A stretch of 63,284 nt of DNA, counting the filler, from Octopus bimaculoides (taxonomy: Eukaryota): the NCBI RefSeq assembly GCF_001194135.2. It is 5 parts of 4 records of this genome, joined end to end, with 100 filler letters (N's around TTAATTAATTAA, not from the genome) between each part and the next. Parts side by side here need not be neighbours in the genome. Positions count along the whole stretch, not along the records: positions 1 to 22,652 come from NC_068987.1; 4 more parts are not named here. One strand, 5' to 3'. The number at the start of each line of letters is the position of its first letter. Positions within the stretch are counted from its first letter, which is position 1. Shown in pieces: positions 1,843-20,522 of the stretch. The notes below the pieces were generated by a model, which saw only the letters and a program-made list of their open reading frames with translations, was not told the DNA's origin and ran no database searches. A program made the translations under genes and the position numbers.

Positions 1843-1853
1843 TTAAGGAGATC
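1843..1853 (-). CDS. Putative terminal coding exon of the repeat gene (G-S-P-stop)
   Basis: gatttttcag|GA TCT CCT TAA is a strong acceptor in the required phase 1, followed by AT-rich UTR-like sequence and AATAAA. Confidence 0.5.
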
Positions 1854-19800: not shown

Positions 19801-20522
19801 TTACAACAAATTTCATTCAAAATATTTGGAGAAACGGAATTTATACAAAACTAATTGTATAGAGTAATTGCAAATATATAATCTCGACTATACGTGGCGA
19901 GCTTTCACTTGTTTAGCATACGCCGGATACATTTTCAAATTTTCACGATTTCACAAATGATTGGACCTAACTTTTGAAAAATGTTTCAGGCTATCTATCA
20001 CCTACTACCTAAATTAAAATTAGTTCATGTAAATGTATTTTAAGTTGATGTCTGAAATATTTCAGATACTCTAAACTTACTGAATTTAATCCCCACTTGC
20101 TTTAACTGCAAAACAACTTTTTCAGTTCAGCGAAATTTAACGCAAATTTATTATATATTTTACAATTAGTTACAAAGTTACTGGTTAAAAACGAGTACAG
20201 AAAGTTTATTTTAAAACGAAGGGTGTTTTCCTTAAATTCTATACTGATGCTGTGTTCAGATATCAAATACAATTAGAAATTTGCGATATTATATTGGAAA
20301 ATAGCATCATACATTTATAACTGATCAATGACTAAGTTGGTAACGAACCTCTCAGGTTATTTTTCAAGTTCTCCAATGTTTCTTGAGCAGCGTCTATATG
20401 AGAATCAAGTTCTGCAAAACCACTACTTTTGCATTCATTTATTGCTTGTTCCAAAAAGTTTACATCTTTTTTCTTTAAAGCAGTTTCCAAATCTTTTCGT
20501 AGCGAATCAGGAGTTTTAATTC
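1843..20522 (-). CDS. Multi-exon gene encoding a tandem ~58-aa alpha-helical repeat protein (16 repeats on 14 exons plus a putative 3-codon terminal exon); family not recognised
   Basis: 14 AG..GT-bounded exons, all phase 1 to phase 1, of 174 (x10), 171 (x2) and 348 (x2) bp; total 2778 bp = 926 codons with no stop. Consensus about G.KTP..LR.KL..A....DK..LE..I.EC...G..EL..DI..ARD.L..LGGG.GG. Confidence 0.88.
1860..2630 (+). mobile_element. Decayed Tc1/mariner-superfamily transposase
   Basis: WLFSDEKNF (first Asp), [25 protein letters not shown] motifs, interrupted by stops. Confidence 0.85.
2839..3012 (-). CDS. Repeat gene exon R16 (174 bp, subtype A)
   Basis: ttattag|GC TTT ... AGA G|gttag; [59 protein letters not shown]. 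Confidence 0.86.
3582..3929 (-). CDS. Repeat gene exon R14/15 (348 bp, A+B double repeat)
   Basis: ttctcag|GA TCC ... GGA G|gttag; [15 protein letters not shown]...LRGGSG followed directly by [15 protein letters not shown]...[10 protein letters not shown]. Confidence 0.88.
4325..4498 (-). CDS. Repeat gene exon R13 (174 bp, subtype B)
   Basis: aaactag|AA CGT ... GGA G|gtcag; [59 protein letters not shown]; A-rich weak acceptor, but the length fits. Confidence 0.82.
5771..5944 (-). CDS. Repeat gene exon R12 (174 bp, subtype A)
   Basis: ggtccag|GT TCC ... AAA G|gttac; [59 protein letters not shown]. Confidence 0.85.
6746..7093 (-). CDS. Repeat gene exon R10/11 (348 bp, A+B double repeat)
   Basis: ttctcag|GA TAT ... 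GGA G|gttag; [20 protein letters not shown]...LCGGTG followed directly by [15 protein letters not shown]...[10 protein letters not shown]. Confidence 0.88.
7490..7990. repeat. Long degenerate (TA)/(CA)/(TACA) microsatellite
   Basis: Direct reading; source of many spurious YI/CV-rich ORFs. Confidence 0.95.
7977..8357. mobile_element. About 380-bp MITE with about 70-bp terminal inverted repeats
   Basis: TATAAAAATATATATAAAGGAGGCCACTAGGTG...CTAGAAGAAGATCACATGTCA (to 8047) is mirrored at 8287-8357 with few mismatches. Confidence 0.75.
8522..8555 (+). ncRNA. Degenerate minimal hammerhead-like motif in a Penelope-derived repeat
   Basis: CTGTTGA A GAGC-GTA-GCTC GAAAC GTT A; stem II and palindromic stem III present, core has an A-to-U change. 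Confidence 0.4.
9699..9824 (+). mobile_element. Tc1-family transposase fragment (DNA-binding region)
   Basis: Hand translation [42 protein letters not shown], typical Tc1 S..TVRR.L...G...R....KPLL motif. Confidence 0.8.
9822..10347 (+). mobile_element. Penelope-type terminal-repeat/retrozyme-like remnant with direct and inverted duplications
   Basis: 128-bp direct repeats 9877-10004 and 10220-10347 (period 343); 54-bp inverted repeat 9822-9875 / 10027-10080; hammerhead core at 10154-10186. Confidence 0.6.
10152..10188 (+). ncRNA. Decayed minimal type I hammerhead ribozyme motif
   Basis: CTGATGA (10154-10160), GAAA (10175-10178), CCCGGG palindromic stem III, GTC cleavage triplet; stems I and II carry mismatches. 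Confidence 0.55.
11101..11240 (-). mobile_element. tRNA-derived SINE fragment
   Basis: Minus strand GTGTAGTAA...GCTTCCCAACCACATGGTCCAAGGTTCAGTCCC (B-box-like); related copies at 17370-17515 and 38100-38480. Confidence 0.65.
11842..12015 (-). CDS. Repeat gene exon R9 (174 bp, subtype B-like)
   Basis: tgttcag|GC CAG ... GGA G|gtatt; [59 protein letters not shown]. Confidence 0.85.
12589..12762 (-). CDS. Repeat gene exon R8 (174 bp, subtype A); absent from the ORF track
   Basis: Translated by hand: aaatcag|GA ATC ... CAA G|gtcaga; [59 protein letters not shown]. Confidence 0.87.
13102..13275 (-). CDS. Repeat gene exon R7 (174 bp, subtype B)
   Basis: ttgctag|GT ATT ... GGA G|gttag; [59 protein letters not shown]. 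Confidence 0.87.
13669..13842 (-). CDS. Repeat gene exon R6 (174 bp, subtype A)
   Basis: taatcag|GT ACA ... GGA G|gtaca; [59 protein letters not shown]. Confidence 0.87.
14558..14731 (-). CDS. Repeat gene exon R5 (174 bp, subtype B)
   Basis: ccaccag|GT TCT ... GGA G|gttag; [59 protein letters not shown]. Confidence 0.87.
15045..15245. repeat. (GA)n(GAAA)n compound microsatellite
   Basis: Direct reading. Confidence 0.95.
16597..16767 (-). CDS. Repeat gene exon R4 (171 bp)
   Basis: ttgatag|GA TTA ... GCA G|gttag; [58 protein letters not shown]. Confidence 0.83.
17115..17288 (-). CDS. Repeat gene exon R3 (174 bp)
   Basis: ttctcag|GA GCG ... AAA G|gttag; [59 protein letters not shown]. Confidence 0.83.
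17370..17515 (+). mobile_element. Degraded tRNA-derived SINE
   Basis: GGTATGACTGCATAGCTGAGAAG...GTGGTTTCGGGTTTCGTCCC head, similar to the 11101-11240 copy. Confidence 0.55.
18229..18478. mobile_element. 250-bp pogo/Tigger-type MITE
   Basis: TIRs CAGTAATCCCTCG / CGAGGGATTAC(GA), flanked by TA at 18227-18228 and 18479-18480. Confidence 0.72.
19166..19336 (-). CDS. Repeat gene exon R2 (171 bp)
   Basis: ccaaaag|GA AAT ... GAA G|gttag; [58 protein letters not shown]; weak AAG acceptor. Confidence 0.78.
20349..20522 (-). CDS. Repeat gene exon R1 (174 bp)
   Basis: ttgtcag|GA ATT AAA ACT ... AGA G|gttcgt; [59 protein letters not shown]. Confidence 0.85.

What the first reader, a model, noticed from the sequence alone, without database searches (positions are those of the whole stretch)
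1843..20522. Unrecognised gene built as a cassette array of 16 one-repeat-per-exon helical modules
Seen in sequence: 14 exons (174 bp x10, 171 bp x2, 348 bp x2) over 18 kb, all with phase-1 ends, joining into 926 stop-free codons. Each unit is about 58 aa with a conserved hydrophobic pattern (L..KL..A, LE..I.EC, G..EL..DI..AR..L) and ends in a Gly linker that sits on the exon junction. The repeats are strongly diverged but keep length and frame despite TE-filled introns, which implies purifying selection. Inference: each unit is probably a three-helix module, giving a beads-on-a-string or solenoid scaffold. Because every exon is symmetric, any subset can be skipped in frame, allowing combinatorial isoforms. 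I recognise no family; a vague resemblance to helical segments of invertebrate hillarin/LTD-1-like proteins is unverified memory.
Basis: partly seen in the sequence, partly recalled or inferred. Interest (0 to 1): 0.9.

Follow-up and report, generated by a model that had tools for sequence, protein, structure and literature searches.

The report
Repeat exons of giant octopus hillarin-like gene
The 14 exons are real, conserved coding exons for 16 copies of a small three-helix module, and they most likely form an internal stretch of a giant cephalopod hillarin/kyphoscoliosis-peptidase-like gene rather than a gene of an unknown family.

Summary
On the minus strand there are 14 exons (174 bp x10, 171 bp x2, 348 bp x2). 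All have AG/GT splice sites and phase-1 ends. They join into 926 stop-free codons that encode 16 units of 57-58 aa.

All three N gaps lie in introns and are flanked by microsatellites. A profile of the repeat finds exactly these 16 units in the window and no decayed copies. An orthologous contig gives dN/dS of 0.23 over four exons, with no indels in exons and conserved splice sites. AlphaFold2 predicts three helices per unit (pLDDT 84).

Pfam and PDB have no match. However, the same module sits directly after the Ig-like_KY domains of molluscan hillarin / LTD-1-like / kyphoscoliosis-peptidase-like proteins, in 1-6 copies. In Octopus it is expanded to many tens of copies: gene products of 2069, 5242 and 6596 aa are on record.

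In a more distant cephalopod contig, the orthologues of window units 3 and 4 lie about 20 kb downstream of the first repeat exon of the KY-like gene, on the same strand. The window is therefore most likely an internal part of that giant gene.

Combinatorial splicing is untested. Public gene models do use different subsets of the repeat exons, but models are not transcripts.

The parts
20349..20522 (-). Exon 1 (174 bp), unit 1, A-like. Its phase-1 acceptor requires an upstream exon that is not in the window.
   Evidence: HMM score 76 bits.
19166..19336 (-). Exon 2 (171 bp), unit 2. It has the weakest acceptor (aaaag|).
   Evidence: HMM score 73 bits. The counterpart on the ENA contig is also 57 aa.
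18670..19086 (.). Assembly gap inside intron 2, flanked on one side by (CT)n.
   Evidence: The orthologous contig has no extra unit between the counterparts of units 2 and 3.
17115..17288 (-). Exon 3 (174 bp), unit 3, a distinctive unit (KYQNKPR...[16 protein letters not shown]).
   Evidence: It is 62% identical to its positional orthologue on the ENA contig, against 41% for the next best unit.
16597..16767 (-). Exon 4 (171 bp), unit 4.
   Evidence: It is 60% identical to its positional orthologue, against 43% for the next best unit.
14558..14731 (-). Exon 5 (174 bp), unit 5.
   Evidence: The orthologue in Logan contigs L003 and L004 is 96% identical in nucleotides with one amino-acid change, while the whole 1069-bp alignment that contains this exon is 84.5% identical.
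13669..13842 (-). Exon 6 (174 bp), unit 6, A-type. The regular A/B alternation starts here.
   Evidence: The unusual GTACAA donor is shared with L001 and with the ENA contig. dN/dS is 0.46.
13102..13275 (-). Exon 7 (174 bp), unit 7, B-type.
   Evidence: dN/dS is 0.21.
12589..12762 (-). Exon 8 (174 bp), unit 8, A-type.
   Evidence: dN/dS is 0.18.
11842..12015 (-). Exon 9 (174 bp), unit 9, B-type.
   Evidence: dN/dS is 0.16.
7094..11841 (-). Intron 9 (4748 bp). It contains the assembly gaps 10545-11061 and 8658-8947, both flanked by (TA)n-type microsatellites.
   Evidence: No repeat unit occurs in the readable part. The ENA contig has no extra unit between the counterparts of units 9 and 10.
6746..7093 (-). 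Exon 10 (348 bp), units 10 (A) and 11 (B) in a single exon.
5771..5944 (-). Exon 11 (174 bp), unit 12, A-type.
   Evidence: A Logan open reading frame, P0059, is 90% identical.
4325..4498 (-). Exon 12 (174 bp), unit 13, B-type. Its junction codon reads Glu rather than Gly.
3582..3929 (-). Exon 13 (348 bp), units 14 (A) and 15 (B) in a single exon.
2839..3012 (-). Exon 14 (174 bp), unit 16, A-type. Its phase-1 donor requires a downstream exon that is not seen in the window.
   Evidence: A Logan open reading frame, P0034, is 86% identical. No unit or KY-type domain occurs in 1-2838.

Best explanation
The window is an internal stretch of a very long tandem array of coding exons. Each exon encodes one 57-58 aa module, or in two cases an A+B pair of modules. 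A module is three short helices followed by a Gly-rich linker, and the linker codon is split by a phase-1 intron.

The module is the same one that follows the transglutaminase-like and Ig-like_KY domains in molluscan hillarin / LTD-1-like / kyphoscoliosis-peptidase-like proteins. Those proteins have 1-6 copies. Octopods have expanded it to many tens of copies.

The window's 16 units most likely belong to the proximal part of that giant KY-like gene. The gene's 5' exons (the KY head) and its 3' tail lie outside the window.

Inferred mechanism: the array forms a long, segmented chain of small helical bundles joined by flexible Gly hinges. This chain would work as a spacer, tether or multivalent docking scaffold attached to a cytoskeleton-associated KY-type head. 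The structural period is a two-unit A+B pair of 116 aa. Because every exon is symmetric, exon skipping would change the length without breaking the frame.

Shown: the exons, their conservation, the three-helix prediction, homology to the hillarin-type module, and the existence of giant KY-like gene products in Octopus. Inferred: that this particular window lies inside that gene, the scaffold role, and any isoform diversity.
For: - Exon structure and open frame.
- Exactly 16 intact units and no decayed copies.
- Orthologous contig L001: exons are 93.5% identical with no indels, introns are 86.6% identical with 81 gap columns, splice sites are kept, and dN/dS is 0.23 over 228 codons.
- Paralogous units: pS is 0.74 (saturated) against pN 0.43, with pN below pS in 90 of 91 pairs.
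- Structure: three helices per unit at pLDDT 84.
- Exhaustive profile search: 287 hits. These include an Octopus 'kyphoscoliosis peptidase-like' protein and Haliotis 'ltd-1-like' proteins that carry Transglut_core and Ig-like_KY.
- Of 28 molluscan KY-family proteins retrieved with a KY-head profile, 22 carry the module at about residues 490-660, after the Ig-like_KY region that the query profile covers.
- O. vulgaris P0172 (2069 aa) has the KY head, then 16-17 modules, then a tail. P0001 from O. bimaculoides is the same gene's tail array.
- On O. bimaculoides chromosome CM046607.1, the KY head and its first repeat exon lie about 150 kb upstream of exon b19 of P0001, on the same strand.
- The orthologous O. 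sinensis locus lies inside a 6596-aa product with Ig-like_KY.
- On ENA contig ctg115097l, the orthologue of the first KY repeat exon (77% identity) is followed on the same strand by seven more units. The clear positional orthologues of window units 3 and 4 come next, about 20 kb downstream. Further units follow in the window's order, with the same exon lengths and, for the unit-6 counterpart, the same GTACAA donor.
Against: - The window contains no KY-type domain, no start exon and no terminal exon, so its attachment to the KY head is inferred from another species' contig.
- No annotated protein containing the window's own exons was found.
- The O. bimaculoides 5242-aa product has no Pfam hit on record, and RefSeq also holds short repeat-only models nested in the array (P0002, P0181). 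A repeat-only transcript unit is therefore possible.
- Only units 3 and 4 have unambiguous positional orthologues on the ENA contig. The other units are too close to the consensus to assign.
- No transcript or protein evidence for these exons was available.
- The inter-unit geometry is only moderately confident (pTM 0.59), so a chain of separate bundles cannot be distinguished from a solenoid.
Confidence: 0.68

Rival explanations
1. The array is a separate, repeat-only gene. It would be a paralogue of the KY-like tail with its own promoter and terminator, encoding a protein made solely of these modules, and it would not be part of the KY-like transcript.
For: - No KY domain occurs in the window.
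- RefSeq has repeat-only models: XP_052825468.1 (192 aa), the O. sinensis model of 313 aa, and a 5242-aa product with no Pfam hit.
- The window's units are only 40-60% identical to the units in P0001 and P0172.
Against: - On the ENA contig, the orthologues of the window's units follow the first KY repeat exon on the same strand, with only more repeat exons in between.
- The O. sinensis product that spans the orthologue of L002 carries Ig-like_KY.
- The O. bimaculoides KY model is flagged 'partial', and its locus contains 4408 N, so the head/tail split there may be an assembly artefact.
- Both ends of the window's array are open, with phase-1 splice sites.
Confidence: 0.2
2. The exons are cassette exons used combinatorially, so that the locus produces many isoforms of different length and unit composition.
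For: - All exons are symmetric (phase 1-1), so any subset can be skipped in frame.
- The O. vulgaris and O. bimaculoides models share only the last seven units and otherwise contain different exons.
- In L002, exon b19 is followed by at least five intact units that P0001 and P0172 skip. Three of them form a separate RefSeq model.
Against: - Gene models are not transcripts. The differences may come from fragmented assemblies and from annotation pipelines that handle long repeat arrays poorly.
- The giant 5242-aa and 6596-aa products suggest that most units can be included constitutively.
- Unit-by-unit conservation in fixed order fits constitutive use equally well.
- This idea adds to the best explanation rather than competing with it.
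Confidence: 0.25
3. The units are decaying duplicate exons or a satellite-like repeat sitting in an intron, with no coding function.
For: No transcript evidence was available, and the introns are full of transposon fragments and microsatellites.
Against: - All 16 units are intact, with open frames and AG/GT sites, although they are only 37% identical to one another on average.
- dN/dS is 0.23 and there are no exon indels against an orthologue whose introns carry 81 gap columns.
- Order, exon length and splice phase are conserved in a much more distant genome.
Confidence: 0.03

Closest known systems
Hillarin / KY (kyphoscoliosis peptidase) / LTD-1 family of transglutaminase-like cytoskeletal proteins
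   Same: The module is homologous to the helical module that follows the Ig-like_KY domains in molluscan proteins named hillarin, hillarin-like, ltd-1-like or kyphoscoliosis peptidase. The Octopus KY-like protein P0172 has the architecture head, then 16-17 modules, then tail.
   Different: The studied family members are far smaller than the Octopus products. The molluscan relatives tested here are 408-983 aa with 0-6 modules. The Octopus products reach 2069, 5242 and 6596 aa, with tens of modules. The window itself holds none of the family's defining domains. I could not test whether fly, leech, nematode or vertebrate members have the module.
Modular giant proteins with one domain per symmetric exon (titin and nebulin type arrays)
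   Same: Tandem duplicated modules are each encoded by one exon with identical phase at both ends, which allows in-frame duplication and skipping. There is also a two-unit super-repeat (A/B). This comparison rests on general knowledge of those genes.
   Different: The fold is different (three short helices, not Ig/Fn3 or nebulin repeats) and there is no sequence relationship. Pfam gives no hit.
Spectrin-type three-helix-bundle repeats
   Same: The prediction is a chain of three-helix units.
   Different: Spectrin repeats are about 106 aa with long helices that run on into the next repeat (from general knowledge). Here the units are 58 aa with 14-17-residue helices and Gly-rich linkers. There is no Pfam Spectrin hit and no significant Foldseek match.
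Helical repeats in tails of protist myosins and other protist proteins (Rhodelphis marinus, Breviolum minutum, Polykrikos)
   Same: The same profile matches 4-20 tandem stretches per protein, with the core pattern L..A...D...L..AI.EAE.aGl....l..Ar..L. Whole-protein E-values fall as low as 3e-31.
   Different: The period is about 44-52 aa, there is no Gly linker, and each stretch scores only 6-23 bits. Common descent is plausible but convergence of an amphipathic helical pattern is not excluded.

Membership tests
Hillarin / KY / LTD-1 family | Transglutaminase-like core domain (Pfam Transglut_core, PF01841) | tested here: not met
   Pfam finds nothing in the joined 926-aa product. tblastn of the KY heads of P0114, P0093 and P0146 against the window finds nothing. 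The window is an internal fragment with open ends, so this shows absence from the window, not from the gene.
Hillarin / KY / LTD-1 family | KY-like immunoglobulin-like domains (Pfam Ig-like_KY, PF23265) | tested here: not met
   None in the window. The domains are present in the Octopus relatives P0114 and P0172 and in the O. sinensis 6596-aa product that spans the orthologue of locus L002, another stretch of the repeat array.
Hillarin / KY / LTD-1 family | Helical module C-terminal to the Ig-like_KY domains, as seen in molluscan members | tested here: met
   The profile built from the window and P0001 units hits Haliotis P0093 (E 1e-14) and P0146 (E 1e-10) and Octopus P0114 (E 4e-13) in a search of 1.8 billion proteins. 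It also hits 22 of 28 molluscan KY-family proteins at about residues 490-660.
Hillarin / KY / LTD-1 family | Physical continuity of these exons with the KY-head exons in one gene | tested here: inconclusive
   On the ENA contig, the orthologue of the first KY repeat exon lies about 20 kb upstream of the orthologues of units 3 and 4, on the same strand. The KY head itself is not on the stretch I could fetch, and the window's own genomic position could not be determined.
Unnamed 58-aa three-helix module (this repeat family) | Unit of 57-58 aa matching the consensus, with L24, I28, L39 and A46 nearly invariant | tested here: met
   All 16 units score 72-91 bits.
Unnamed 58-aa three-helix module (this repeat family) | One unit (or one A+B pair) per exon, with phase-1 introns splitting the linker Gly codon | tested here: met
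   Seen in the window. The same AG|G...G|GT layout and 171/174-bp exons occur in L001, L002, L005 and L006.
Unnamed 58-aa three-helix module (this repeat family) | Three-helix fold | tested here: met
   This is an AlphaFold2 prediction only: helices at residues 5-18, 21-34 and 37-53, with pLDDT 84.3 for a single unit and 84.0 for four units. There is no experimental structure.
Known helical repeat families (Spectrin, TPR, PPR, HEAT, ankyrin and others) | Significant match to a curated sequence model or to a solved structure | tested here: not met
   No Pfam family reaches its cut-off for the joined protein, for P0001 or for any of the 39 units. PDB sequence and profile searches give E of 0.36 or worse. 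The best Foldseek E-values are 0.04 for four units and 1.8 for one unit.

The most novel reading that the evidence does not exclude
Octopods have turned the short helical tail of a hillarin-type cytoskeletal protein into an array of about 90 modules. Its symmetric exons would be spliced combinatorially, giving a large, regulated repertoire of scaffold lengths and unit compositions. The window would be one block of such cassette exons. The module itself would be an ancient eukaryotic cytoskeletal repeat shared with protist myosin tails and not yet curated in any domain database.
Probability: 0.15. Interest if true: 0.7.

Novelty: new variant of a known kind. Interest (0 to 1): 0.45.

Why it matters
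The result turns an apparent orphan gene into a defined problem. A small helical module of the hillarin/KY family has no Pfam model and no solved structure, and cephalopods have amplified it into one of their largest genes.

This matters in three practical ways:
- The module is a clear candidate for a new curated domain family, with members in molluscs and possibly in protist myosins.
- Current Octopus annotations appear to split or under-sample this locus. Models of 192, 313, 806, 1563, 2069, 5242 and 6596 aa come from this locus or its orthologues, so annotation and proteomics results for "kyphoscoliosis peptidase-like" and "uncharacterized" proteins there should be read with care.
- If exon choice is regulated, the locus would be a tractable case of length-tunable scaffold proteins.

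It does not address a long-standing open question as it stands.

Tried and rejected
- Pfam scans of the joined protein, of P0001 and of every unit gave only sub-threshold noise.
- PDB sequence and profile searches found nothing.
- Foldseek against the PDB, with the four-unit and single-unit models, gave only generic helical or designed-repeat matches at E of 0.04 or worse. I draw no fold-family assignment from them.
- The word-indexed protein search with the whole 926 aa returned only P0001. With the unit profile it returned only unnamed short open reading frames.
- Exact look-ups of a window open reading frame, of P0001, of P0114 and of P0172 found no record. The window's own genomic address and the full O. 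vulgaris locus could therefore not be fetched.
- tblastn of the KY heads and of the P0001 tail against the window found nothing. The same search against the ENA stretches found only repeat units.
- I considered and rejected a satellite or dead-exon reading and any relation to spectrin, TPR or HEAT repeats.
- I suspected a mariner-like transposase in the open reading frame at 2003-2305 (+) from its look, but Pfam gave no hit, so that stays unverified.
- Literature searches found no description of this repeat. They gave only general hillarin / LTD-1 / KY background and one passing proteomic mention of a 'kyphoscoliosis peptidase' in O. vulgaris skin mucus.
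Full report
**1. What is in the sequence**

The repeats lie on the minus strand. Reading each candidate with its flanks shows 14 exons bounded by AG and GT.
- Ten exons are 174 bp, two are 171 bp (19336-19166 and 16767-16597), and two are 348 bp (7093-6746 and 3929-3582).
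- Each exon begins with the last two bases of a codon and ends with the first base of the next, so all introns are phase 1. In 13 of the 14 exons the split codon reads Gly.
- Joined, the exons give 2778 nt, or 926 codons without a stop, and 16 units of 57-58 aa.
- The 39-unit alignment A1, built from the window and one paralogue, has the consensus GxxSPxxLRxxLxxAxxxKDxxxLExxIxECExAGxPELxxDxxxARxxLxxLGGGxG.
- A profile of A1 run over all six frames of the window finds exactly these 16 units at 72-91 bits. Nothing else scores above 8 bits, so there are no decayed copies.

Two corrections apply: the lower bound of the finding (1843) should be 2839, and exon 2 has a poor acceptor.

**2. The assembly gaps**

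The three N runs lie in intron 2 (18670-19086) and intron 9 (8658-8947 and 10545-11061). They are flanked by (CT)n and (TA)n tracts, which are typical assembly breaks. No exon is cut. The reading frame across them depends on splice phase, not on gap length. A collinear orthologous contig has no additional unit between the counterparts of units 2 and 3, or of units 9 and 10. A hidden exon is therefore unlikely, although it cannot be excluded.

**3. Internal organisation**

The units are old duplicates. Mean pairwise identity is 37%, with a range of 22-60%. From unit 6 onward two types alternate.
- Type A has EC.AAGMpELD.DI.
- Type B has [24 protein letters not shown].
- A-A pairs average 44% identity, B-B pairs 50% and A-B pairs 34%.

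The duplicating block was therefore an A+B pair of 116 aa. That is exactly what the two 348-bp exons encode.

Between paralogous units, synonymous sites are saturated (pS 0.74) while pN is 0.43. pN is below pS in 90 of 91 pairs.

**4. Selection**

A Logan contig from sequencing run SRR11869394 (L001) aligns to window 13882-11776 at 86% identity.
- Exons 6-9 are 93.5% identical with no indels.
- The introns are 86.6% identical with 81 gap columns.
- All splice sites are kept.
- dN/dS is 0.23 over 228 codons, with per-exon values of 0.16-0.46.

Exon 5 has one amino-acid change and 96% nucleotide identity in two other contigs. The 1069-bp alignments that contain it are 84.5% identical overall. 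These are functional coding exons.

**5. Structure**

AlphaFold2 with repeat alignments predicts three helices per unit, at residues 5-18, 21-34 and 37-53, followed by the Gly-rich linker.
- The single-unit model has pLDDT 84.3.
- The four-unit model has pLDDT 84.0 and pTM 0.59.

Foldseek against the PDB gives nothing at E of 0.001 or better for either model. PDB sequence and profile searches are also empty. Pfam has no family above its cut-off for the joined protein, for the paralogue or for any single unit. The three-helix idea is supported as a prediction. Whether the units are separate beads or stack into a solenoid is not resolved.

**6. What family it is**

An exhaustive profile search of 1.84 billion representative proteins gave 287 hits. 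Most are short single-exon open reading frames from cephalopod genome assemblies. The long hits are the informative ones.
- P0114 represents a cluster that holds 'kyphoscoliosis peptidase-like, partial [Octopus bimaculoides]' and a 2069-aa Octopus vulgaris protein, P0172.
- P0172 reads Transglut_core, then Ig-like_KY x3, then a Lys/Glu-rich stretch, then 16-17 of these modules, then a non-repeat tail.
- The single hit of the first search, P0001 (A0A0L8GL38, O. bimaculoides, 1563 aa, about 24 modules), ends with the same tail. It is therefore the tail array of that gene.
- Haliotis proteins that NCBI names 'lim and transglutaminase domain protein ltd-1-like' or 'uncharacterized' also have the module after Ig-like_KY.
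- A search with a profile of the KY head returned 28 further molluscan proteins named hillarin, hillarin-like, ltd-1-like or kyphoscoliosis peptidase. Of these, 22 carry one to three modules, at about residues 490-660. Haliotis P0093, found in the earlier profile search, carries six.

The module is a regular but uncurated part of molluscan KY-family proteins.

**7. Is the window part of that gene?**

The window's units are only 40-60% identical to the units of P0001 and P0172. They are therefore different exons, not those already in the two models. Several observations indicate that the real locus is far larger than either model.

(a) P0172 and P0001 share only their last seven units (88-100% identity). 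The other 10 units of P0172 and 18 units of P0001 have no counterpart in the other model, with identity of 66% or less. Orthologous units at that species distance should be about 90% identical.

(b) On O. bimaculoides chromosome CM046607.1, the KY head lies at about 38.877-38.896 Mb and its first repeat exon follows 8.7 kb downstream. Exon b19 of P0001 lies in locus L002 at about 38.717 Mb on the same strand. It is followed by at least five intact units that neither model contains. Three of these form a separate RefSeq model, XP_052825468.1.

(c) L002 lies inside a gene call whose product is 5242 aa. Its O. sinensis orthologue (about 91% nucleotide identity) lies inside a product of 6596 aa that carries Ig-like_KY.

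(d) On an ENA contig from a more distant cephalopod (ERZ21867824, ctg115097l), the orthologue of the first KY repeat exon (77% identity) is followed on the same strand by seven more units.
- Next come clear positional orthologues of window unit 3 (62%, against 41% for the next best unit) and unit 4 (60%, against 43%). They lie about 20 kb downstream of that first exon.
- After them come units in the window's order, with the same 171/174-bp lengths and phase.
- The counterpart of unit 6 has the same unusual GTACAA donor.

I conclude that the window most likely lies in the proximal part of the giant KY-like array (confidence about 0.7). I could not place the window itself on a chromosome. I found no annotated protein containing its exons, and the KY head is not on the ENA stretch I could fetch. 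A repeat-only gene therefore remains a live rival.

**8. How it probably works**

What is known of the family:
- Drosophila hillarin concentrates at the cleavage furrow and interacts genetically with a septin.
- C. elegans LTD-1 localises in an actin-like pattern (PMC3718969).
- Mouse KY is, from my own knowledge, a Z-disc-associated protein.

By inference, the head anchors the protein to the cytoskeleton. The module array forms a long segmented tail of small helical bundles joined by Gly hinges. That tail could act as a spacer, an elastic tether or a multivalent docking platform. Each unit keeps its own identity and position across species. This argues that units are not interchangeable padding.

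Nothing here tests the function directly.

**9. Splicing**

All exons are symmetric, so any subset can be dropped in frame. The differing exon content of the public models is compatible with alternative exon use. It is equally compatible with annotation trouble in a long repeat array. No transcript data could be examined, so the combinatorial-isoform idea is neither supported nor refuted.

**10. Verdict**

The 'unrecognised family' claim is replaced by membership of the hillarin/KY tail-module family. The module itself remains uncurated.

The feature is a new variant of a known kind: a KY-type protein with a hugely expanded module array. Interest is moderate.

Noticed in passing
window donors at 19165, 17114, 16596, 14557, 13101, 6745, 3581, 2838 (minus strand); also L001, L002, L006: Eight of the 14 donors read G|GTTAG. 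Position +3 is T, where a purine is usual by my general knowledge of donor sites. An in-frame TAG follows the exon directly (GGT TAG), so an unspliced transcript would end cleanly after the Gly linker. The same donor recurs in the related arrays. It may simply have been inherited with each duplication.
   Followed up: partly
P0009 (Rhodelphis marinus, 3162 aa), P0147/P0175 (Breviolum minutum cluster), P0045 (Polykrikos), P0008, P0129 and others: The unit profile also matches 4-20 tandem stretches, with a period of about 44-52 aa, in protist proteins. Two of these have an N-terminal myosin motor and one has EF-hands. Each stretch is weak (6-23 bits), but whole-protein E-values reach 3e-31. This could be an old eukaryotic cytoskeletal repeat or convergence.
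   Followed up: partly
P0172 versus P0001; L002:1480-1656 and the downstream units at 9234, 10043, 11687, 13006 and 15269: The O. vulgaris and O. bimaculoides models of the KY-like gene share only the last seven modules and the tail. RefSeq places a separate 192-aa 'uncharacterized protein LOC128248363' on exons that lie between two consecutive exons of those models. Either the locus is badly annotated or exon use really differs.
   Followed up: partly
window 876-1472 (-): A reverse-transcriptase fragment (Pfam RVT_1, E 7e-19) lies downstream of the last repeat exon. It is a retroelement remnant, not part of the gene.
   Followed up: yes
window 2003-2305 (+): A 100-aa open reading frame (…[14 protein letters not shown]…) looks to me like a Tc1/mariner-type transposase fragment, but Pfam gives no hit at E<0.01. 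It lies inside the finding's stated range but holds no repeat unit.
   Followed up: partly
window 7423-8059, 10306-10544, 15022-15309, 19539-19775 and other introns: The introns hold long microsatellite tracts, including (TA)n, (CATA)n-like, (CT)n/(GA)n and (CA)n. These produce the many spurious Y/I/C-rich and S/L-rich open reading frames in the mechanical ORF list and explain the positions of the three assembly gaps.
   Followed up: yes
L006:19115-19267 (ENA contig position about 68026): The unit at the position corresponding to window unit 9 scores only 41 bits, and its alignment covers only part of the model. It may be degenerate or frameshifted in that species, or it may be a sequencing error.
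   Followed up: no
P0093 and P0146 (Haliotis), C-terminal ~170-180 aa: After the helical modules, the Haliotis hillarin-like proteins have a conserved C-terminal region (…YKRPKPCIQDVMKATYIILGEK…W…) with no Pfam hit at the threshold used. By eye it recalls the dynein stalk / microtubule-binding region. This was not tested.
   Followed up: no
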